Source: Hormiphora californensis (lineage: Eukaryota; Animalia; Ctenophora). Taken from it: DNA of 64,000 nt. Below the pieces are notes generated by a model. The model worked only from the letters and a program-made list of their open reading frames with translations. It was not told the origin of the DNA and did not search any database. The DNA lies in assembly GCA_020137815.1 (NCBI GenBank), contig CM035358.1:3162001-3226000 (forward strand), read 5' to 3'. Each line of letters begins with the position of its first letter. Position 1 is the first letter of the stretch. A program made the position numbers and the translations under genes. Of this stretch, positions 10,301-39,502 are shown in pieces.

Positions 10301-12858
10301 GGGGGCCATCTGAAATAGGACTGTAACCTTTCTGTACCTATAATATTGACAGAGGCAGTAGTAGAGATACTGCCACCCTGGAATGCTCCAGAGGCAGTGT
10401 ACAGTGCTGTACAGTTGTATGTTCCACCTTCAGTCACCTAGGGAGATAGGGATAGTGATGGTTAGAATGAAAGGTTTTGAGTATCTCTGATACCTCTTTA
10501 AGATCTCTTATTCTCCAGCAGCTAACTACCTATAACACTAATGTACCGTGTATTCACTGTTGTATTCATTATTACTGTATGTCTTGTTTCCCTCCTGCTC
10601 CAGATCTCCATCACTGTCATACCAGTTTATTTTGGCTTCATAAGACAAGTTTTCTATACCACAAGTCAGGACAGTGGTCTGCCCTTTTAGTACCGTGGTT
10701 CCAGTAGGCTTTAACCGGAAATCTAACGAAGTTAGGGAGTTATTAAACGCCACTCACACATGTGTTGTGTTGTGCCAGTCTAAGTGGGTTGGGCGAACCG
10801 TCCGTGGTGGATGAAGGTCCCAGTGCAAAGATCTTAAAAAATGCTGCGAATCTAAAAATTTTATCGAAAATTTGCTCCCACCAAATTTTGAAGGTCACCT
10901 CAATAACATTAATTGTGTTTAACAACTATGTTTTTGTGGTCAGCATTAGAGAAAAAATGTTTAAATTATTTTGCATAAACGAGGAAAATGTTTTAAAAAA
11001 ATAAGATTTATCGGGGTTCGAACCCACACAGGTGCTCGCTTCTGATATCATGGGTAATCGCCTTAACCACTCGACCACTGAGGCTAATGAATTTTATCCG
11101 TTCATATATGTGCGCGCGACATGGCAGCATGGTTGTCATAGCTACACTTCTTCTGCTGCCTCATCTGCTGCTGCTAGATTAGGCAGCATTAGCAAAATAC
11201 GAATTTCGCGACTGAGATGAGGTAGAGATACCAAATTTCGTACCCCGACCTATTTTTCGACGCTCAACACGATGCACGTATCTATTTCACTCCACGATGT
11301 CTAGTTTTTGCTGTACAGCGAATTTTTGCTACTTTTAGGTGTTTATTTACTAATTTTTTGCTGCTAACTAAATTCGCAAATTAGCACAATCTTTGCACTG
11401 GGATGAAGGTGGTTTGCAGCTGATGGCTGCAGTGTTCCTCACGTTTTCCGGAGTTGTATCAGACATTCAGGACAAGGAACCCTCAAATTAATTTGTTTAA
11501 AGTAGTGTCTGATAAAACTCTGGAAAACGTGAGGAACACCGCAGCCATCAGCTGCAAACCACCTTCATCCACACACTTTTCACCACTGATACAACCATGG
11601 TTACCATGGTAATAGTCGATGGGGGTTGACTATAACTCTCAACGCATCTAGCCTCTGCCATCAAGTTACCATGGTAACATATCTCTCAAGACTAACCGAT
11701 AATAGAGATCGTAGCACTTGAACTATCAACATTCCCACCGTTAAATCCAGTAGCAGTAGCAGTACTCTGCCCTACACCAATACACACCCGCTTCAGTAAC
11801 CTGTAACAGAGAAAATAGGAATGCTTCGGACATAGCTTGTAGAAATATAATAACAACTGGGAGATCTGTTTCAAAACGGCAGACAATATCGAGCACTAAG
11901 TAGGTAGTACCTCTCTTTCCTAAGTTGGTTGTTTGAACCTCACTCCCCAGATGCAGTGCCATCCTTGTACCACTGCAGTTTGGGTGTGTAGGGGGTGGAG
12001 GACGGGAGAACACAGCTGAGTTTCAAACTACCAAGTATGGGTGTGGTCTGGGGGCTAGTGGTGAAGTCTATAACTTTTAAAGGGGCAGTAGTACTGACAC
12101 CCATGCTGTGTTTACAGGTATAGTTTGTGTCAGAGGTAGGGACGGAGGAGAGGGAGAGGACTGTGTTATTAGTTGAACTGTCGAATGTGTAGGAGTCAGT
12201 GGAGATGGATCCAGAACTAGTGCTCCATGATATATCATCCTTCTTGATCTCTATATTCGCCTGAAACAGAGAGGGATGTTAGCCTGACCCTCTTTTACCC
12301 AGTAATAAAGGAGGGTTAGAACATTAGGAGGAGATGTTTGGTTGGCAAACATAAATCATAGGACAAAATGGGGTTCAATACATACCTCTATAGCGCAGGT
12401 TATTTTTGCTGAGGATTGGGCGAGTTTCACTACATATTTGGTCTCTCCTGTCACGTACACTGAAACAGAAGTTCAAGTTAGAAAATTTGAACTAGGCTGT
12501 GAAAATACCCGTGATACTCTCTCTCCCATTGGTTTGAAACAGACGAAGATGATACCGGAGACAGGTGTGTGTGTGGGACTCATTAGATTCAGTAGATGCA
12601 ATGTGAAACCGTGTGAAATACATCCTCATTGACATATTAGTGTACATTGTAAAATTTTGAGATATAATTAATAATATAATTCTTTAGGTAGCACTGCTTG
12701 TACAACTTATAACACCCCCCAGTGTTATAAGTTTTCACTTATAACACCCCCCAGTGATACATGAAAACTTATAACACTGCTGCACTTCGAACTCCTTACT
12801 CCACTGTTTCTGTCACACTTAAAAACCGTTGGAAAGATAAGCGTGTACGAACTCTCTC

Positions 12859-29812: not shown

Positions 29813-31202
29813 GGGTACGCTAACCAAAATTTTTTTTCGAGTGCAGGGAAATCTCTCACCGTAGGGTTGTAGGCCATGCCAAGGAGACCTCAAATATGCA
29901 ATTTTAGCCCTTAAGTCGAATTCATATTTTTGCTACAGCTGCTTGAAAAATGAACTGAAAATAAGTTTTTGGCATCTTAAAAATACATTTGTAAAGATAG
30001 GATCATAAAAATTTGTGGATTTGAAGAGGACAAAGAGGTGAGTACCCACAAAAATTTTTTTTGAAATCCGAGCTGATTTCCGGTCCTGAGATGGATTTCT
30101 TTTTTTTGACTTTAACGCCCTATTTGGCAAAGTTCCGAAAACATGTGAAAGCTGTAAATTGGTGAAAAGTTGCGTCTAACGATTATCTAAGTGGCCATAA
30201 ATTTTGGGCGTGTCCTTATTTGAGATAAGCTGTACAGAGTTTTTTTTGTGAAAGCCGTCATTTCAGAAATAAATAAATTCCCTGTATCTCAAAAACGGCT
30301 GATCGTAGAGACCTGAGACTATGCTTAAACGATTCAGAAGGTCCGATTTTGGGGGGGTCCTCTGAAAGACATTTTGCTCCTACTTCAACCGTTTTTGCTG
30401 TAATTGCGAAAAACAAAACCCCATCTTCGCCCTGGTGGATTTTTTGTGATTTTGTTTTTGGTGATTATAGGGACCCATATGGACCAAATAGTGAAGGAAT
30501 TAGCTTGTTACACATTTTTCCATAGTTTCGGTCCTTTCTTAGCCAAAATTCCCTAATTACAGGATATTGGAGTTTAGCTTTTGCCCTTTTCATAGAATTT
30601 GTTTTTCGCAATTACAGCAAAAACGGTTGAAGTAGGAGCAAAATGTCTCTCAGAAGACCCCCCCAAAATCGGACCTTCTGAATCGTTTAAGCATAGTCTC
30701 AGGTCTCTACGATCAGCCGTTTTTGAGATACAGAGAATTTATTTATTTCTGAAATGACGGCTTTCACAAAAAAAACTCTGTACAGCTTATCTCAAATAAG
30801 GACACGCCCAAAATTTATGGCCACTTAGATAATCGTTAGACGCAACTTTTCACCAATTTACAGCTTTCACATGTTTTCGGAACTTTGCCAAATAGGGCGT
30901 TAAAGTCAAAAAAAAGAAATCCATCTCAGGACCGGAAATCAGCTCGGATTTCAAAAAAAATTTTTGTGGGTACTCACCTCTTTGTCCTCTTCAAATCCAC
31001 AAATTTTTATGATCCTATCTTTACAAATGTATTTTTAAGATGCCAAAAACTTATTTTCAGTTCATTTTTCAAGCAGCTGTAGCAAAAATATGAATTCGAC
31101 TTGAGAGCTCAAATTGCATATTTGAGGTCTCCTTGGCATGGCCTACAACCCTACGGTGAGAGATTTCCCTGCACTCGAAAAAAATTTTTGGTTAGCGTAC
31201 CC
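29813..31202. mobile_element. Non-autonomous foldback DNA transposon with TTAA TSD (Kolobok-like GG...CC ends)
   Basis: ~600-bp near-identical TIRs, ttaa|gggtacgctaacc...ggttagcgtaccc|ttaa. Confidence 0.92.
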
Positions 31203-31320
31203 TTAAGTGTAGCGAAAAACAAAAAGAAATACAACTGATTTCCTTGCCTTGATATGATCATGGCGGATGCGGGATGATGATGATTACCGTTTCAACTTTC
31301 CAGCGCTTAGGGCCTAGAAA

Positions 31321-31560
31321 TTAGCAGCTTTAGACGTACTAGATTCCAGTGCTTCTAATGATGTCATAATTAGATGGATCCCGGCCCATAGAGGGTACGA
31401 TGGGTATGATCGAAACGAAATAGCAGACATTCTGGCTAAAAGAGGTGCTCAGGAAATCGAAGAAGTTACCCTCATACCAATCCCCAAAGCGACAGCTTAT
31501 GCCGCCCTCAGAAAAACGATATCGTTCTATTATAAGAAGGCAATGGTGTCACTTCACCCC
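31321..31560 (+). mobile_element. RNase H fragment of a retrotransposon (probably non-LTR)
   Basis: The frame from 31321 reads IRWIPAHRGYDGYDRNEIADILAKRGA, matching the W.PAH.G..GNE.AD.LAK motif. Confidence 0.8.
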
Positions 31561-31952
31561 CAGAAACCACCCCTTAAAGAGTGGTCTCATCCCATCACCC
31601 AGGACGGGGAAAGAGAGCTTCATTGCACCCACCCCTTACTGGCTAGTGCTCTGCACTGTCAAGGTGGTGAATGCTCCGAGCTATACTATACATAGTTCCT
31701 ACCTAAAGGGAGTTTGTATCCATGAAATTCTTTTTGGTAGTCGATCACCGCTTTAGAAAGTGGTTAGTGGTACAATTATAACCCCGGAAGTGAACCATTT
31801 GATGACAATTGTGTGCCAAAGTCTGCAGAAGCTACCTTGTTTTATTAAAACCTAATTATCCTCTGAATAAAGAGTTCAGAGCAAGAATTAAATTAAATAG
31901 GGAAGAAAATCGAAAAATACTAAATAATTATCCTCTTTTTATCGATAAGATC

Positions 31953-33748
31953 ATGGCTGAGATAGAGAATGTTAACATCAAGGATGACCATCCAGTGATA
32001 GATCCCCTCGACAGATCAGGTTAGGATAATTACCACCCCAACATGGTCAATAACTTGGTTCACGTACAACATTGGAATCAATCCAATTGGCCAATAAATC
32101 TAGTTGACTGCACGGAGAGCGCCAAATCTCTGCTGTTCAGTGTTCAAGATTTATTGACCATAATTGGTACCAAGTATACAATTTGTTTATTCCCAATAGG
32201 TGGAGTTGAAGACGAGGATGAGCCCACTTCAGCTCTCGGACCGAAACCCTCAGATAAATCCATCCCTCGCATCCCCTCTATCCGCCCAACTACCCCTGAA
32301 CGGGCTGGGACCCCTTCAGAAGATCTGGAGGAGCACCTAGGACCTGATGACAGTGCCTCCCAGACCGGGTTGGATCGGGGTCAGCTGCTGGAGAAGTACC
32401 AACTTGCCCTGAATGAGAGAGACAAGATCTTGAACCAGAACGGACAACTTCAGCACAAGATTGCTGAGTATTTTAGAAAGAAGAAGGGTGCTGATGAGCG
32501 ACAGGAGGTGGAAAAGAGTGTCACTGATCAGGAACAGAGGTAAGAGGTTCTGTACAGTATACAATCTAGTATAATAAGTAGCCTGCAGTTTTATACAAGT
32601 GCTTGCCATTACTACTACTTCTAAGTTAATAAGGTTTTCACCATCCCCCAACGACCGTTGTTTCAACCTCCATTTTAACCCCCCCCCCTCCTGCCGTCAG
32701 ATACACAAAGTGCCTCCAGGCCCTAGACGAGCTAGAGATTGAGAACGATCGGGTACAAAAGGAATCGGAGCTGCGGATTAGTGAAGAGAAAGAGAAGATG
32801 GAGGAGAAGAAGAGTCACGTGGATGAGATGACATTGCAGTATTTTGAGTTTAAGAAAGGAGTTGCTAAACAAGCTGTTAATAGCAGGTATGATAAACAAT
32901 TCAGTTACACTGTAACATTATAATCTCTCTCTCTGTAAATTTCAAAAAAGGGTCTCTCTCTCTCAGTTCTCTCTCCATCTCGCTTCTTCCCCTCTGCAGG
33001 TCTGGAAAACCGTTGGCGCTCAAGGACATCGACCAGTGTGTCATGAATGAGAAGAAGAAGGAGGAGGAGGTCATTGCGGTTCGGTTGGAAAATATCAAAC
33101 TCATTAATAAGGTATACTGTTCGTACTGTCGTCATCCATACTGGGAGAGAAGGAGAAAGGGGTTAGTTTGATACGGGTAATGGGTGTGGAACTGGATATT
33201 ATTTTGTAGAAAAAGAGAAAAGTAACTTCAAAAGGGAAAAGTAACTTTAGATATAAACTTACTCTTGGTCGTTGAGCATTCCTCCGTCAAGTCTGAGTCC
33301 ATGTCCAATATCTCTCACATATCGTCCCTCTTCGGCTGCACCAGAGTTATCTTCGTGGGATTCAAGTGATCCCAAACTAGAGGGAAAGAGAGAAACTATT
33401 TAGCTTATTGAGGCATTTGATCAGCAGCTGCCGACATAGTAATAAGGGTTCTCTAAAGCTAGGTATAATAAATAACAATTCTTCGAATAGCAGTTGGTAT
33501 ATTTTGCTAAGCTATGGGGGCAGACATACCTTTTTGCAGTTGATGCAGAGAAAAGGCACAGGGCAACAAGAATTACTAGAGAACACTTCATCTTGGAGTC
33601 GAGAGATTGAGAAATGAGCTATCTGGACGGCTGACGTGGCTTCTTATTGACCAACCGCCGCCAGTCTAACCAACCATCATCCACTTAGCGATTACCTTTC
33701 TATCTTCCTCTTCCCACAAAGACAGAGACAGAGAGAGAGAGATAGAAA

Positions 33749-33827
<79 letters not shown>

Positions 33828-35330
33828 AGGGAGAGAGAGAGAGTGCTGTATAAGCGTCAGAGAGAGAATAAAGATAAGGAGAGAGGCTGAGAAGTTGTCC
33901 TCTATCCCTCCTCTATTCGTAACCGCAACATCATCGGTTGGCTTGTTTCCGCTAATGGGCGATATCATTTCTCTCTATCTCTCCCCCATCTCTATCTCTC
34001 TCCCCCATCTCTATCTCTCTTTCTCAAACCATGTCTTCCCATTAGCTCAAGAAACGTGAAGCTCAACTAAAACAAAAAGAAGAGCTGGCTGATGGGCTCC
34101 ATTTGATCGACTTTGAACAGCTCAAGATTGAGAACCAGACCTATAATGAGAAGATTGAGGAGCGGAATGAGGAACTCCTCAAGCTCCGGAAGAAGATCAC
34201 TACCACTGTCCAGGTATTATAGTTGCGGTGGCGTCCCCATTGGAAGTTTTGTGGTAGTTTTGCGGTCCGGCCTGGTAGCGATGCTGATGATGTAATGTTT
34301 CAGGAAGGTCATTGGCCACTCGATTATTAGCATTAGACTTTTATTCTTTAAAGATTCAGATTCAGATACCCCGAATATTTCCCACGGTTATTGCTGCATA
34401 CCCGAAATTCGAAAGAAAGAAAAATCCGTTTTTCAAACCCGCAAGTTCTCAAAGTTTAAACCCACAATATGGTCAGCTTCTACAACTTTATATTATCAGG
34501 TTCTGACGCATGTCAAGGAGAAACTCCAGTTCGTTCAAGGAGAGAACGCTGGACAAAGAGAGAAATTGAAAGTTGTTGAGTTTGAGGTATGAAACTCTTG
34601 TTTAACTGCAACCACGAGAAACGCCAAATACTAAAACCAAACTAATACGATAAATTTATCTTTACCGTTTTGCTTCCCATATATCCTAGGTCGCCAAAAA
34701 GAGGGATATCCTTTCTCGAACGAAGCAAGCCAGGGATGCCCTTAGAATTGATAATGTTAAACAGAGAAAGAAGTGCGGCTTGATTGGACAGGAATCACTC
34801 CTTCGTGATCTAGAGGTATTGTAAAGTCGGATTTTTTGAAACTGTCACCCCCTGGGTATTTTCAAATTTCGTAAATGACCATAAATCCGGTTCCTGACGA
34901 GATAGAGACTTGAAATTTGGAGGTTACGAAGATCTTGCTAAGTTCTTCCGAACCTCCAAATTGCAAGTCTCTATCTTATCAGGAACCGGAGATATGGCAA
35001 ATTTTTTATTTCAGGGGGGTGACAGTTTCAAAAAATCCGACTTTATATTGGATCAATGTGTGATCACTTTGTTTCATTACACCTCTCTCGGTGTTGTGGC
35101 TCAGTTAAGGATTCCTTCAACCCATGTTAATTGATATGTCCTGACCCTCCTTTAAGGGTCGAGATGGGGCTCGAGCAACTAAATATTACCTTCTCGTGCA
35201 GGTTCGGAAAGACGACAGTGAGTCCCTGACGACTTCTATCGAGAACCTACAGCGCCACCACATGGACCTGCTGATGCAGGTGGATGGGGTGCGACAGAAG
35301 GTTGATGCTGTCAAGGTTCATTCTATGTGA
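31953..35330 (+). CDS. CCDC96: Coiled-coil domain-containing protein 96 (CFAP184; ciliary, DUF4201)
   Basis: 8 exons (~31953-32019, 32200-32539, 32701-32886, 33000-33111, 34045-34213, 34500-34586, 34690-34815, 35202-35330). Diagnostic segment LKQKEELADGLHLIDFEQLKIENQTYNEKIEERNEELLKLR. Confidence 0.92.
33104..33591 (-). CDS. Small secreted propeptide (neuropeptide-precursor-like), 70 aa, nested antisense in a CCDC96 intron
   Basis: Exons 33591-33530, 33376-33263 and 33140-33104 have GT-AG sites and matching phase-2 junctions. Product: MKCSLVILVALCLFSASTAKSLGSLESHEDNSGAAEEGRYVRDIGHGLRLDGGMLNDQDMDDDSTNSIPY*. Confidence 0.82.
34822..35045. mobile_element. MITE in a CCDC96 intron
   Basis: TIR taaagtcggattttttgaaactgtcaccccctg / cagggggtgacagtttcaaaaaatccgacttta. 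Confidence 0.88.
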
Positions 35331-35923
35331 TTTTAGAAGGGATCTACAGAGAGACACTGGAATTAGAGATTATCTGAAAGACTGGGACTCAGACAATAAG
35401 AGATGAACACAGGGGAAAGTGAAAATGGTTTTGAGACTTTTGAGAGATGAGTGATATGTAAATAGAAGACTTTCTTACTTAGTGCGACTGTAAATAATAT
35501 ACACGTGGCGAGTCAAATGTTTTTTAACAAATCAAAAGAAGCTGAGTTTTGACGCATGTTACCTCCAGCATTTGACGCTGCATTACAGGCTGATTACGAC
35601 ATTGTTCGCCAATCTCCTACAACGCAGAAACTCAGTCATGGATCGAGGGAGAGAGAGAGAAAGTAAGGGAAGGAGAGAGAGGAAGAGGGCAATAGAGAGA
35701 AAGACGGAGCTAGATTCATATAATTTATCTCTCATAAAATGATGAACATGCACGCATGCAGGCGTTCTAAACACAGTTAATAAAAACACGGCCCCGCGAC
35801 GTATCCCAAGAGAGATGGAGAGAGAGGGGGTGGTTAGTTAAAAAGAATTCTAGCTATTTATATTCCCCTGCTGACTCTCTGCAGTACTATAGTAAAGCCG
35901 CTCAGTAGTATATTTTGTAAATC

Positions 35924-38343
35924 ATGGTGCGTTGTCAGTTGGTGGGGGATGCGGGGGTTGGAAAGCGGAGTTTAGCTCATCAGTTTGTTATGGCTCACTG
36001 TCCCCAACATCTACCGTCAACCTTTGAAAGGTATCCATTATGTCTTCCAGCTGTCAACCTCTTTTCTTCCAGTTGTCCAGTTGTGATACTTTACATGATA
36101 TGGTTTCAACCCTTCATCTCAACCCAAGTAGAGACGGCCTCCAAGAAGAAGACACTTTACATGACGCAGCGTCCTCGGCCCGGTTCGGGTAGTCTTTTGT
36201 GGGACAATTGAATCCAAACTGAGTCTTTAGATAAGTAATATCTCCCTCCAGTTACTGCAAGATTTACGAGGGACAAGAGATAGAGTTGCTAGTTGACCTG
36301 CCAGTAGATGTACACAATGTACCCATGACTGAAGAGTATTTTAAAACTGTAAGTTCAGTGAGAATTCTAAGTCACCATAATCTTCGTAAATAATTTTTAT
36401 ACTAAAACTTCTAAACCCGGTCCAGCAGGTGCGACTGATTTAAATAAACTATTCATTTGTTGCTAGGTTGACGCTTTGATATTTTGTTTTTCTGTGGACA
36501 ATCTTGGTAGTTTTGAAAGATGTCAGAAACACTGGTTTCCTCTTCTACGACCCTTCATTTATGATATACCTTCATTCCTGGTTAGTACTGTGTGGTTAGT
36601 ACTGTGTGGTTAGTACTGTGTGGTTAGTACTGTGTGGTTAGTACTGTGTGGTTAGTACTGCGTGGTTAGTACTGTGTGGTTAGTACTGTGTGGTTAGTAC
36701 TGTGTGGTTAGTACTGTGTGGTTAGTACTGTGTGGTTAGTACTGTGTGGTTAGTACTGTGTGGTTAGTACTGCGTGGTTAGTACTGTGTGGTTAGTACTG
36801 TGTGGTTAGTACTGTGTGGTTAGTACTGTGTGGTTAGTACTGTGTGGTTAGTACTGTGTGGTTAGTACTGTGTGGTTAGTACTGTGTGCAACCCTCACCT
36901 CAGTGCTACCATCGTATTCTTAATTATCAATTCATTTGTTATTCTTAACATCTGATTTATAGTTTCGCATCCTAGGTTGGGTGTAAGAGTGACTTATTAC
37001 CGAGGACATCGATTCTTTCTGGGATAACTTCCCCTATTAGATCTCCCTCACCACCACCACCACCTCCTCCCACTATGGAAAATGGGACTTCAATTACACC
37101 GCCCCTATCAGCAGGTAAGTTGTTCAGCCCACTCCTAGAATATTGTTACTGAAGTAGGTTATTCTTCAAATTAGCTTCACAAATTACAACATGTGTCCCA
37201 TGGCCTGGTAGTAACTAGTAGAGGTCTAATGCTACTGACAGTGGCAGTTGGTACTAATATTACAGCTGACAATGGTTCATTGTTTCTAAGTAAACGCTCA
37301 GACACGAGATTCAAATTGAGAACAATAAACAAACACAATGAAAGCACATCTCTTTCTGATCTTATGTGTACTCTGTGTGAGAAAAGAATAGTTCACAAAT
37401 CACAATGTTCTAGTATTCCACACAATGGTTTATCTTGCCCTCCTTCTCTTCCCTATGTGTTATGCTGCAAACTGCTGGGACAGGACATGTCGTTCAAATC
37501 ACTCCTGAACCAATCCCCTGTAACCAACCAATGCAGTACTGTGATGTAAGTATCACTCTGTAAGACAGTCTACAGCAGCAAGAAATCTCCACCTCCCTCC
37601 CTAACCTGTGACTAGTACATTCACCTATGCCTGTTTCTGTCACCATGACGATCTAGGAGTTGCACTGTGCTCCTGTTCAGGTAAAGACCCAGGCAGTTGT
37701 AGTGTTCAGTATCCTCGCATTGTTTGGGTTGTGTTTGGGGGTTTGTACTGCCAAATCGGTCATGTGGTGGCAACATAAGAAGGAGTTGTTAGAGGCACAT
37801 GAGAGGAGGAAGAGGCTGAATGCTCCTACATCACCTGACTTGAGAGGAGAGGAGATGCTGGGCAAGTTGGAGGCGGCTTAGCAGTTTGATAAGGTGTGTC
37901 TTGTTTAATAAGGTGTGGAGGATCTCTCTCCTATTTAGCTGAGCCTTTGGGATCATTCATCTCTCTCCTGCGGTGTATTTAGCTGAGCCTTTGGGATCAT
38001 TCATCATCACCGCATCATGTCCTCTACTTTCATCTCCGTCTCAGATTCATCACTCTCTACTTTGTACCACTTTACAATAACTCACCGCATCATGTCCTCT
38101 ACTTTCATCTCTTTGATCGTCTCTACTAACAACCCCCTACCCAGGTCCACTAACAACTCTCCACCCCCAGGTCCACTCTTTGTAACTTGGGAACTGGGGG
38201 ATAACCTGGCCCGACAGCTGGCATGCCAATCCTACCACGAGTGTTCCACAAGGGAGGACACATCCTCGATTAACAGACTGTTCTCGAGTGTAACAGACAA
38301 AACTAAGAATCCATCCCAGAGTTGTGTGTGTACTGTCCAGTGA
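35924..38343 (+). CDS. Atypical Rho-family small GTPase with a Pro-rich insert and CaaX box
   Basis: Exons ~35924-36030, 36252-36348, 36467-36580, 36977-37114 and 38171-38343. Motifs CQLVGDAGVGK, PSTFE, IFCFSVDNLGSF..HWFP, LVGCKSDL, YHECS and C-terminal CTVQ*. Confidence 0.85.
36581..36888 (+). repeat. 14-bp minisatellite (GTTAGTACTGTGTG)x22 starting at the splice donor
   Basis: Read directly: 308 bp, with two variant units (gcgtg). Confidence 0.97.
37229..37881 (+). other. Possible nested Cys-rich single-pass membrane protein gene or pseudogene in the Rho intron
   Basis: ORF 37193-37549 is Cys-rich with NxT/S sites. ORF 37660-37881 has a TM segment (AVVVFSILALFGLCLGV) and a charged tail. 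The splice phases do not join cleanly. Confidence 0.35.
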
Positions 38344-38434: not shown

Positions 38435-39502
38435 CTAGACCTTCTGATTGTTCCGTGCAATGAATGCTCGAGAGGAGAGGCTGGAAGGGTTCCGATTGAC
38501 GCCCCAATTCTGGCCACTTCCAGCAGAAGAATCCCCGGTTGTACCACGTGGGAATCGGAGAACCCCATAACGTACCAAGTCTCGGACCATAGTGCGGATA
38601 CCAGTATTACGGAGGCAAATTATAAGGGGGTTATAGGCAACTAGCATGGCCTGACAGATCACGGCTTCAGTGAATTGTAGATAATAATACCAGTAGGGCC
38701 AGGGATGATCAGGTTCCGGGGCGGGCTTGAAGTCTATTAGAATCTCAGATCCAATCGATAGTACACACCAAATGAGTAGCCCAACATTTAGATACAATAT
38801 CATAATGGCACTTCTCCGCTTCATGTCGGTGAGCTGGTTTCCACAGGTGAACAAGTGGACTACAGTGAGAAGAGAGAGGACTAGAGAGATCCCAGTGTTG
38901 ACCAGGAACATCAAAACAGAAAGGGTGAACCTAAGAAATGTAGCCCCTGTGTCTTTTGTGTTTACTATATCTAGAACTGTTTGTAAAGCACTAGACCACT
39001 CATACCTATCGCCTCCAAAGTTTATCAACATAGCCCCGCTTGATAACCAGACGAAATTCACTGCAACAAATGTCCATGTAATGATAGAGACACTCTTCTC
39101 ATGTGATATGACCCACAGGGGAAACCTGATCTTGATGTATCTAACAAATGATATGGCGCATGTGATTGCCATTGAAGAGAATCCCAGAACGTATGTAAAA
39201 AGGCAGACACCCCGTCTTGCTAGGGTTGTATCAACAATGAACATGGGATCACGTATTGGCTTTATCAGGTTGTAGAGAGAGGAGACAGCACGGAGGAGAA
39301 ATAGGAAATCAACTGCAGCAAGAAGTTGGAATAGTCTGGAAACGATGGAGGGGGGCTGTTTGTAGTTGTAGATAAACACCACAGGATTTAGGAGAAAGGA
39401 GATCAGAGTAGAGATGATGAGAATAACGGCGAAGATAACGGTGAGAGGAGTATCCCAGTCCGAGTTGTGGGGATAGTTGGTATCGGGGTAGAATATTGCC
39501 AT
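38435..39502 (-). CDS. Intronless orphan rhodopsin-class GPCR
   Basis: 355 aa with 7 hydrophobic segments; LNP (TM1), LAAVD (TM2), ISFVRYIKIRFP (DRY-like) and YNPLII (TM7). Confidence 0.9.
   Translation of the reverse strand: MAIFYPDTNYPHNSDWDTPLTVIFAVILIISTLISFLLNPVVFIYNYKQPPSIVSRLFQLLAAVDFLFLLRAVSSLYNLIKPIRDPMFIVDTTLARRGVCLFTYVLGFSSMAITCAISFVRYIKIRFPLWVISHEKSVSIITWTFVAVNFVWLSSGAMLINFGGDRYEWSSALQTVLDIVNTKDTGATFLRFTLSVLMFLVNTGISLVLSLLTVVHLFTCGNQLTDMKRRSAIMILYLNVGLLIWCVLSIGSEILIDFKPAPEPDHPWPYWYYYLQFTEAVICQAMLVAYNPLIICLRNTGIRTMVRDLVRYGVLRFPRGTTGDSSAGSGQNWGVNRNPSSLSSRAFIARNNQKV

What the first reader, a model, noticed from the sequence alone, without database searches (positions are those of the whole stretch)
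33104..33591. Hidden 70-aa neuropeptide-precursor-like gene antisense inside a ciliary gene intron
Seen: three small minus-strand exons (33591-33530, 33376-33263, 33140-33104) with canonical sites and matching phase-2 junctions. They splice to MKCSLVILVALCLFSASTA-KSLGSLESHEDNSGAAEEG-RYVR-DIGHGLRLD-GG-MLNDQDMDDDSTNSIPY*. The ORF track misses it entirely. Established: a signal peptide, acidic spacers, an R-x-x-R convertase site and a Gly amide donor are typical prepropeptide architecture. Inference: the mature product is DIGHGLRLD-amide or DIGHGLRLDG-amide, a possible lineage-specific signalling peptide hosted in a motile-cilia gene.
Basis: partly seen in the sequence, partly recalled or inferred. 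Interest (0 to 1): 0.92.

Follow-up and report, generated by a model that had tools for sequence, protein, structure and literature searches.

The report
Small comb-jelly signalling-peptide precursor gene
A real, spliced and polyadenylated three-exon gene on the minus strand encodes a 70-residue secreted peptide precursor; it is a previously undescribed paralog of a known comb-jelly neuropeptide-precursor family that shares the core IGHGLRLD, so it is a useful addition, not a new kind of thing.

Summary
The three minus-strand exons, their GT..AG sites and their phase-2 junctions are as described. Contigs from marine metatranscriptomes of three studies carry both junctions exactly, and one carries a non-templated poly(A) tail at 32877.

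The genome is almost certainly Hormiphora californensis. The gene is single-copy. Five of six variant sites in a diverged contig are synonymous.

The core peptide is not an orphan. IGHGLRLD occurs twice, letter for letter, in a second three-exon, phase-2 gene on contig C13. That gene is the clear ortholog of Mnemiopsis ML056913a, a published precursor expressed in nerve-net and aboral-organ cells whose synthetic peptide speeds swimming. The lobate TFQamide precursor carries the same [DE]IGHG[LF]x[LM][DE] motif.

The window gene is therefore a divergent, single-motif paralog of a known ctenophore family. The proposed DIGHGLRLDG-amide is unproven. It has mass-spectrometry precedents in ctenophores, where the amide-donor Gly is followed by an acidic tail and no basic site (WTGamide, TFQamide).

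"Inside an intron" is only partly right. The last exon and 3'UTR run antisense across a whole coding exon of the host, a CCDC96/CFAP184 ortholog.

Neuronal expression and the mature product remain untested. An earlier report of this scan describes another intron-nested peptide precursor in this genome.

The parts
33592..33614 (-). 5'UTR, minimum extent. No upstream ATG. X2 contigs stop matching the genome at 33613/33614.
33530..33591 (-). Coding exon 1 (62 nt). It encodes MKCSLVILVALCLFSASTAK plus 2 nt. The signal peptide has its predicted cut after Ala19 (S-T-A|K).
33377..33529 (-). Intron 1 (153 nt, GT..AG, phase 2).
   Evidence: joint 33376>33530 in X2, X3, X4
33263..33376 (-). Coding exon 2 (114 nt). 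It holds an acidic spacer, RYVR (residues 39-42), the conserved core DIGHGLRLD (43-51) and GG (52-53).
33287..33312 (-). DNA encoding the family motif D-IGHGLRL-D. It is identical at protein level (IGHGLRLD) to both repeats of the C13 paralog.
33141..33262 (-). Intron 2 (122 nt, GT..AG, phase 2).
   Evidence: joint 33140>33263 in all four runs
33104..33140 (-). Coding part of exon 3: the acidic C-terminal tail ...MDDDSTNSIPY and TAA. The last 8 nt overlap the end of the host exon.
32877..33103 (-). 3'UTR (227 nt) ending at a poly(A) site at 32877. It is antisense to host exon 33000-33111, host intron 32887-32999 and the last 10 nt of host exon 32699-32886.
   Evidence: (contigs 32932/32959-33140; T18 loose end before 32877)
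33000..33111 (+). Host CCDC96/CFAP184-like coding exon. It aligns to human CCDC96 residues 350-382 and is fully covered in antisense by the small gene's last exon.
33112..34045 (+). Host intron (934 nt). It contains the small gene's promoter region, exons 1-2 and 29 nt of exon 3, and includes a (GA)n tract at about 33712-33849.
34046..34210 (+). Host exon with the CCDC113/CCDC96 coiled-coil signature (LHLIDFEQLKIENQ). PF13870, E 4.9e-19. Aligns to human CCDC96 residues 390-440.

Best explanation
This is a single-copy, three-exon, protein-coding gene of Hormiphora californensis. Its ~460-nt polyadenylated mRNA encodes a 70-residue prepropeptide of the ctenophore IGHG-motif peptide-precursor family. 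That family includes Mnemiopsis ML056913a, its Hormiphora ortholog on contig C13, and the lobate TFQamide precursor ML030215a.

Shown:
- transcription, both splice junctions and a poly(A) site;
- a synonymous bias of natural variants;
- exact conservation of IGHGLRLD between the two Hormiphora paralogs, which also share the three-exon, phase-2 / phase-2 gene structure;
- proprotein-convertase and peptidylglycine-monooxygenase-like genes in the genome.

Inferred:
- The signal peptide is removed after Ala19.
- A furin/PC-type convertase cuts after R39-Y-V-R42 and frees the conserved core.
- The core is released as a short secreted signalling peptide. The most likely form is DIGHGLRLDG-amide, with Gly53 as amide donor and the acidic tail 54-70 discarded. 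This follows the mass-spectrometry-proven ctenophore peptides WTGamide (...WTG-G-AMQEEE) and TFQamide (...TFQ-G-LAEDD). A non-amidated IGHGLRLD peptide, as expected for the C13/ML056913a repeats, is the alternative.
- By analogy with ML056913a it would be made in peptidergic (neural or sensory) secretory cells.

The 3' exon runs antisense over a CCDC96/CFAP184 coding exon. The two genes could therefore interfere with each other, but nothing here shows that they do.
For: - Exon model and translation.
- Spliced contigs from three studies and a poly(A) tail.
- Single intron-containing copy in the genome.
- Variants in a ~5% diverged contig: 5 of 6 listed sites are synonymous third positions (6 of 7 counting the split Asp codon), P 0.003-0.017.
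- Signal peptide: n-region MK, h-region LVILVALCLF (mean Kyte-Doolittle 3.5), small residues at -3 and -1. The N-terminus resembles validated ctenophore precursors, for example VWYamide MKCFVVLVALLVLSQSA|SLNS and NPWamide ...|KSIL.
- The motif [DE]IGHG[LF]x[hydrophobic][DE] hits 3 places in 110.7 Mb against 0 in the reversed control: this gene, and two repeats 39 nt apart on C13. With one mismatch allowed, the extra hits are metalloprotease zinc sites or chance.
- The C13 gene is SP-...EEIGHGLRLDSAEEEIGHGLRLD...EEELVGHGIKSNHAWRK, also with phase-2 introns. It is colinear with ML056913a as printed in the papers' supplements.
- BLASTP of the two exon-2 pieces: 8/12 identical, E 3e-5.
- ML056913a: in situ signal in subepithelial nerve-net neurons, the aboral organ, gut/mouth sensory cells and tentacles; its peptide raises swimming speed; homologs across ctenophores, including Hormiphora TSA records.
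- Mass-spectrometry precedents for amidation without a basic site after the Gly.
- P_proprotein (6 matches) and Cu2_monooxygen loci in the genome.
Against: - Similarity to the family is confined to the 8-9-residue core plus shared architecture. Outside it the exon-2 pieces do not align, so convergence or motif shuffling cannot be excluded.
- The C13/ML056913a copies have no Gly after the motif, so amidation is not a family trait.
- RYVR is only a minimal R-x-x-R site, and the family normally flanks the motif with acidic residues.
- The released C-terminal part is strongly acidic, which is unusual for bioactive peptides.
- No tissue or cell-type data, no peptide mass spectrometry and no SignalP run were available.
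- Orthologs in other ctenophores could not be searched. The one exon-2 hit in 1.84 billion proteins was an unrelated repeat protein, and the JGI metagenome contigs gave only chance hits. Those collections evidently lack ctenophore transcript proteins: the gene's own product is not in them either.
Confidence: 0.65

Rival explanations
1. It is a secreted small acidic peptide or protein with a non-neuronal role, for example a product of digestive, epithelial, tentacle or defence cells. The IGHG core would serve some other purpose, such as a sorting or processing element of the pro-region.
For: - In the TFQamide precursor the peptide found by mass spectrometry is not the IGHG segment.
- ML056913a is also expressed in gut/mouth and tentacle cells.
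- Hayakawa et al. note peptide-processing genes in digestive and epithelial clusters.
- The mature region is very acidic.
Against: - The mass-spectrometry screen kept only amidated peptides, so IGHG peptides would have been missed.
- The core is the only segment conserved between paralogs and across orders, which fits a ligand better than a spacer.
- ML056913a is expressed in neurons with neurites and has a behavioural effect.
Confidence: 0.22
2. The transcript acts mainly as a natural antisense RNA that regulates the host CCDC96/CFAP184 gene. The 70-codon ORF would be incidental or secondary.
For: - The last exon covers a whole host coding exon, the host 5' splice site at 33112 and an adjacent intron in antisense.
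- In three of the four runs only the small transcript, not the host mRNA, was assembled from this 5-kb stretch.
Against: - Synonymous bias of variants in the ORF.
- First-ATG ORF with a signal peptide.
- The core peptide is identical to that of an unlinked paralog that has no relation to CCDC96.
- Antisense overlap is commonplace in this compact genome.
Confidence: 0.08
3. There is no gene here. The ORF and splice sites are chance, and the contigs come from contaminating DNA or another organism.
For: Contigs from environmental samples cannot by themselves show strand or expression level (caveats printed).
Against: Exact GT..AG junctions in 99-100% identical contigs from three studies, a poly(A) tail, and no intronless copy in the genome.
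Confidence: 0.01

Closest known systems
Mnemiopsis leidyi ML056913a neuropeptide precursor (Sachkova et al. 2021, bioRxiv 10.1101/2021.03.31.437758) and its Hormiphora ortholog at G000:C13:~2617000 (L010)
   Same: - About 70-85 residues, with signal peptide, acidic pro-region and no cysteine in the mature part.
- Core [DE]IGHGLR[LM]D. IGHGLRLD is identical in the C13 gene.
- Three exons with both introns in phase 2: signal peptide in exon 1, motif in exon 2, tail in exon 3.
   Different: - One motif copy instead of two plus a degenerate third (LVGHGIK).
- The motif is preceded by RYVR and a 22-residue spacer instead of EE.
- It is followed by GG and an acidic tail instead of acidic or dibasic spacers.
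- It lacks the ...GHGIKSNHAWRK C-terminus.
- No alignable similarity outside the core.
TFQamide precursor (Bolinopsis mikado; M. leidyi ML030215a; Hayakawa et al. 2022, PMC9525235)
   Same: Short precursor with [KR]SL after the signal peptide and IGHG motifs (EDIGHGFALD, DDIGHEFKLD, IIGHGLSLEN). An amidated product is made from a Gly that is followed by acidic, not basic, residues.
   Different: Three motif copies. The proven amidated peptide (…LKSGTFQ-NH2) lies between the motifs and has no counterpart here. It is listed so far only for lobates (Supplementary Data 1 of that paper).
WTGamide precursor (ML02212a; Hayakawa 2022, Sachkova 2021)
   Same: In WTGamide this is KR|AKFSMSNYRGHKQGNRGWTG-G-AMQEEE, and amidation is proven by mass spectrometry.
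   Different: No sequence similarity in the peptide. This is an analogy of processing only.
Nested intronic and antisense-overlapping genes of Hormiphora californensis (Schultz et al. 2021, PMC8527503)
   Same: A small gene on the opposite strand, largely inside a host intron. 2357 such genes are reported in this genome.
   Different: About 32% of this transcript's span lies beyond the intron boundary, over host exons.

Membership tests
Ctenophore IGHG-motif peptide precursors (ML056913a / TFQamide-precursor type) | Core motif [DE]-I-G-H-G-[LF]-x-[LM]-[DE] | tested here: met
   DIGHGLRLD at residues 43-51. A genome-wide degenerate pattern gives 3 hits against 0 in the control; the other two are in the ML056913a ortholog. 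The motif is printed in the ML056913a and TFQamide precursors.
Ctenophore IGHG-motif peptide precursors (ML056913a / TFQamide-precursor type) | Short (<100 aa) precursor: N-terminal signal peptide, acidic cysteine-free pro-region, no Pfam domain | tested here: met
   70 aa. Hydrophobic h-region and S-T-A|K cut site. Exon 2 and exon 3 pieces have pI 4.5 and 4.05. No Pfam hit. SignalP itself was not available.
Ctenophore IGHG-motif peptide precursors (ML056913a / TFQamide-precursor type) | Shared gene structure with a bona fide member | tested here: met
   The C13 ortholog of ML056913a also has three coding exons, with exon 1 of 65 nt against 62 nt here, and both introns in phase 2.
Ctenophore IGHG-motif peptide precursors (ML056913a / TFQamide-precursor type) | Sequence similarity beyond the core motif (common descent rather than a shared motif) | tested here: inconclusive
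   BLASTP aligns only 12 residues (8 identical, E 3e-5 pairwise). The DNA alignment is conserved only over ATTGGACATGGACTC and its neighbours.
Ctenophore IGHG-motif peptide precursors (ML056913a / TFQamide-precursor type) | Expression in peptidergic neurons or sensory cells | not testable with these tools
   Only environmental metatranscriptome contigs were available. The Mnemiopsis data are from the literature.
Amidated neuropeptide precursor (general metazoan definition) | Convertase site N-terminal of the peptide | tested here: met
   R39-Y-V-R42 is the minimal R-x-x-R motif. P_proprotein domains are present in the genome. Cleavage itself was not shown.
Amidated neuropeptide precursor (general metazoan definition) | C-terminal Gly amide donor followed by a processing site | tested here: inconclusive
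   GG is followed by MLNDQD and no basic residue. Ctenophore mass-spectrometry precedents exist for G followed by AMQEEE and by LAEDD. A Cu2_monooxygen (PHM-like) locus is present.
Amidated neuropeptide precursor (general metazoan definition) | Mature peptide detected, and active on a receptor or behaviour | not testable with these tools
   This needs peptidomics and bioassay.
Nested intronic gene sensu Schultz et al. 2021 | Transcript within one host intron, with at most 15% overlap with host exons at either end | tested here: not met
   The transcript spans 33614-32877 (738 nt). The 235 nt from 33111 to 32877 lie beyond the intron 33112-34045 and cover host exon 33000-33111 and 10 nt of exon 32699-32886.

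The most novel reading that the evidence does not exclude
IGHGLRLD-type peptides would be an ancient, pan-ctenophore signalling-peptide family. Hormiphora would have split it into two channels: a multi-copy, non-amidated precursor on C13 and this single-copy, convertase-released, C-terminally amidated form (DIGHGLRLDG-NH2). The amidated gene is transcribed antisense through a coding exon and splice site of the ciliary CCDC96/CFAP184 gene. Peptide production and assembly of a cilia-regulating complex would then be mutually exclusive, or coupled, in the same cells.
Probability: 0.1. Interest if true: 0.65.

Novelty: new member of a known kind. Interest (0 to 1): 0.42.

Why it matters
Ctenophore neuropeptides bear on whether nervous systems arose once or twice. 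Only a few dozen precursors are known, and almost all come from lobates.

This locus adds a cydippid paralog to one of the few families that has functional data (ML056913a). It shows that the 8-residue core IGHGLRLD is the conserved unit, both within a genome and across orders. That points to the IGHG segment, not only the amidated TFQ peptide, as a candidate ligand.

It also gives a concrete peptide to synthesise and look for (DIGHGLRLDG-NH2 or the free acid). In addition it is a clean example of a highly represented small mRNA overlapping a ciliary gene's coding exon in antisense.

Tried and rejected
- phmmer of exon 2 against 1.84 billion representative proteins gave one hit, P0001. This is a 726-aa beta-helix repeat protein with RIVRSIGHGVFL repeats. 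I rejected it as chance or repeat inflation. The gene's own product is absent from that library, so the blank says little.
- A degenerate RDIGHGLRLD pattern in JGI metagenome contigs gave 5 hits. All are GC-rich with no matching context, so I treat them as chance.
- Pfam on exons 1 and 2 found nothing.
- A full-text paper search for DIGHGL, GHGLRLD and RYVRDIG gave 0 papers. The link to known precursors came only from searching the supplements of PMC9525235 for IGHGL.
- Relaxing the genome pattern by one mismatch added four tandem metalloprotease genes (HEMGHGLGIEHS zinc site) and isolated chance ORFs. None is a family member.
- I considered a trans-spliced leader at the 5' end. The loose letters beyond 33614 do not match the published Hormiphora leader. 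The only leader copy in the window is at 11482-11510.
- I considered a paralog as the source of the ~5% diverged contig. The genome holds one copy, so it is an allele or a close relative.
- All searches used the exon pieces by reference, and the published Mnemiopsis and Bolinopsis sequences were compared by eye, not typed into tools.

Full report
**Observation**

Read on the minus strand, the window shows the following:
- an ATG at 33591;
- a 62-nt first coding exon ending ...AAAAG|GTATGT;
- a 114-nt second exon (33376-33263) preceded by a pyrimidine tract and TAG, and followed by GTAAGT;
- a third exon starting at 33140 after ...CTCTCCCAG, with TAA at 33106-33104.

Both junctions split a codon after its second base. 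The three in-frame pieces translate to MKCSLVILVALCLFSASTAK, LGSLESHEDNSGAAEEGRYVRDIGHGLRLDGGMLNDQ and MDDDSTNSIPY. The split codons are AG|T (Ser) and GA|T (Asp).

**RNA evidence**

A search of public runs with 31000-36000 found only marine metatranscriptomes holding 6-8% of the sampled words. I laid contigs of four of them, from three studies, on the stretch.
- The joint 33140>33263 appears in all four runs. The joint 33376>33530 appears in three. Both have CT..AC ends on the + strand, which is GT..AG for a minus-strand RNA.
- Two single contigs (X3 record 10, X4 record 13) carry the coding sequence across all three exons (from 33591 in X3, from 33587 in X4) plus 3'UTR, at 99-100% identity.
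- One X2 contig ends at 32877 in 18 non-templated T's on the + strand. This is a poly(A) tail of a minus-strand mRNA.
- The mRNA is therefore at least 33614-33530, 33376-33263 and 33140-32877, about 460 nt.
- In three of the four runs this small mRNA is essentially the only thing assembled from the 5-kb stretch. Host-gene contigs appear only in X1. This records presence, not a measured level.

The genome holds only this one intron-containing copy, so the spliced contigs cannot come from DNA.

**Coding constraint**

One X2 contig is about 5% diverged. Its six listed differences inside the coding exons are five synonymous third-position changes and one Cys3>Phe in the signal peptide. A further variant at the split Asp codon is also synonymous. 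The chance of this under no constraint is 0.003-0.017. This is one haplotype and few sites, but it points to selection on this frame.

**Organism and surroundings**

The assembly has 110,691,255 bases in 45 contigs. The Hormiphora californensis assembly is described as 110 Mb in 44 scaffolds (PMC8527503). The 3' 29 bases of that paper's spliced leader occur 626 times in this genome and never in the reversed control. I take the genome to be H. californensis or something very near it.

The + strand gene is a CCDC96/CFAP184 ortholog.
- Exon 34046-34210 matches Pfam CCDC113_CCDC96_CC at E 4.9e-19. It aligns to human CCDC96 residues 390-440 in the axoneme structure 8J07.
- The + strand stretch 33000-33111 has a CAG acceptor and a GTATAC donor, is open in the phase required by both neighbouring exons, and aligns to CCDC96 residues 350-382, colinear with the next exon. 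It is a real host coding exon.
- The host intron is therefore 33112-34045.

The small gene's promoter, exons 1-2 and the first 29 nt of exon 3 lie in that intron. The rest of exon 3 runs antisense across the host 5' splice site, the whole 112-nt host exon, the next host intron (32887-32999) and 10 nt of the preceding host exon. "Inside an intron" is thus only partly right. By the 15%-overlap rule of Schultz et al. this is an antisense-overlapping gene, not a strict nested one. Such arrangements are common here: 2357 nested intronic genes are reported.

**What the protein is**

The N-terminus has the classical signal-peptide layout: MK, a 12-residue hydrophobic core (best 10-residue Kyte-Doolittle mean 3.5), then S-A-S-T-A with small residues at -3 and -1. 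The remainder is cysteine-free and acidic, with no Pfam match.

Sequence searches of large protein and metagenome collections gave nothing real. Those collections do not even contain the gene's own product, so the blank is uninformative.

The decisive lead came from searching the supplements of Hayakawa et al. 2022 for short pieces of the peptide. IGHGL occurs in two published ctenophore precursors:
- the TFQamide precursor of Bolinopsis/Mnemiopsis (ML030215a), with EDIGHGFALD, DDIGHEFKLD and IIGHGLSLEN;
- Mnemiopsis ML056913a, with EEIGHGLRMD, EEIGHGLTLD and ELVGHGIKGS.

I then searched the window's own genome with a degenerate pattern for [DE]IGHG[LF]x[hydrophobic][DE]. It hit three places against none in the control (about 0.16 expected by my own estimate from the pattern's information content): this gene, and two sites 39 nt apart on contig C13.

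The C13 locus is a three-exon gene whose pieces read:
- MFKFTVVFFLIATLVTISTSR
- VESEEIGHGLRLDSAEEEIGHGLRLDNSLD
- AMVDSETAELAESAEEELVGHGIKSNHAWRK*

Both of its introns are in phase 2. By direct reading it is colinear with ML056913a, down to the shared ...EEELVGHGIK(G/S)(S/N)HAWRK end. It is therefore the Hormiphora ortholog, and Sachkova et al. list Hormiphora TSA homologs for ML056913a.

The eight residues IGHGLRLD are identical in the window gene and in both C13 repeats (BLASTP 8/12 identical, E 3e-5 for the pair). The window copy shares the codons ATT GGA CAT GGA CTC with the second C13 repeat. The two genes also share architecture: the signal peptide fills a 62- or 65-nt exon 1, the motif is in exon 2, the tail is in exon 3, and both introns are phase 2. 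Outside the core there is no alignable similarity.

Relaxing the pattern by one mismatch adds only metalloprotease zinc sites and chance ORFs. As far as this pattern sees, the family in this genome has two members.

**What is known about the family**

ML056913a was predicted by NeuroPID. [quoted passage not shown] Its synthetic peptide increased swimming speed (Table S4). Which segment was synthesised is not in the text held here.

The mass-spectrometry screen that found TFQamide kept only amidated peptides, so it could not have reported free IGHG peptides.

**Likely processing**

Convertase P-domains and a PHM-like monooxygenase are encoded in the genome.

The weak point of the amide proposal is that GG is followed by MLNDQD, not by a basic residue. 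Ctenophores do have mass-spectrometry-proven amidated peptides with this layout:
- AKFSMSNYRGHKQGNRGWTG-NH2, from ...KR|...WTG-G-AMQEEE;
- ...LKSGTFQ-NH2, from ...TFQ-G-LAEDD.

By that analogy DIGHGLRLDG-NH2 is the best single guess, and I put it at roughly one in three. The C13/ML056913a copies lack the Gly, so a free-acid IGHGLRLD peptide is the family-wide alternative. G38-R39 could also mark an amidated N-terminal fragment. None of this is shown.

**Verdict**

The gene is real (about 0.97). It is very probably secreted (about 0.85) and probably a diverged paralog of the ML056913a/TFQ-type family (about 0.8). It plausibly encodes a signalling peptide (about 0.55-0.65).

It is a new member of a known kind, not a new kind:
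- small ctenophore precursors of this layout are published;
- the family's Hormiphora ortholog is already listed;
- nested and antisense genes are a documented feature of this genome;
- an earlier report of this scan (s1-872971) describes another intron-nested peptide precursor in the same genome.

What is new:
- the paralog itself;
- the recognition that IGHGLRLD is the conserved unit shared by ML056913a-type and TFQ-type precursors;
- the possible amidated variant;
- the antisense overlap with a CCDC96 coding exon.

**Limits**

- There are no stranded raw reads, no tissue data, no SignalP run and no access to other ctenophore genomes.
- The joined 70-aa model was deliberately not sent to any search. 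All searches used exon pieces by reference.
- The published Mnemiopsis and Bolinopsis sequences were compared by eye from the papers' text.
- One oddity remains unexplained. X2 contigs stop matching at 33613/33614 and continue with letters resembling the gene's own 3'UTR in the opposite sense. This is not the spliced leader and is most likely a chimeric contig.

Noticed in passing
window 38435-39502 (-): An intronless 355-aa ORF. It has no Pfam hit, but its ESM-Atlas features score 0.96-0.97 to rhodopsin-type (7tm_1) GPCR clusters. It is a likely orphan ctenophore GPCR about 5 kb from the peptide gene. No evidence links the two.
   Followed up: partly
L010 (G000:C13:2615651-2618676), minus strand; motif hits at C13:2617151-2617215: A three-exon gene encoding the Hormiphora ortholog of the Mnemiopsis neuropeptide precursor ML056913a. 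It has two exact EEIGHGLRLD repeats and an ...ELVGHGIKSNHAWRK end, and both introns are in phase 2.
   Followed up: yes
L012 (G000:C7:2574000-2583999), + strand: Four tandem, apparently intronless matrix-metalloproteinase-like ORFs (zinc site HEMGHGLGIEHS, RRKR-type pro-domain site). The last has a long PATEA/PTKPA low-complexity tail.
   Followed up: partly
window 33613-33614 and beyond (X2 contigs): Two contigs stop matching the genome at the 5' end of the small mRNA. For the one whose extra letters were shown, they resemble the gene's own 3'UTR read in the opposite sense (GAACTGATGAGAGAGACCCTTTTTT...). They do not match the published spliced leader. This is probably an assembly or cDNA chimera, but it is unexplained.
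   Followed up: partly
window 33712-33849: A long (GA)n/(TC)n tract in the host intron, roughly 100-230 nt upstream of the small gene's 5' end. The reads tool skipped it as a repeat.
   Followed up: no
window 11482-11510 (-): One copy (2 mismatches) of the Hormiphora spliced-leader 3' end. The genome as a whole has 626 matches to this 29-mer, which identifies the species.
   Followed up: partly
window 32953 (3'UTR of the small gene / host intron): A 2-nt deletion polymorphism in a short (TC)n run, seen in contigs of X2 and X4.
   Followed up: no
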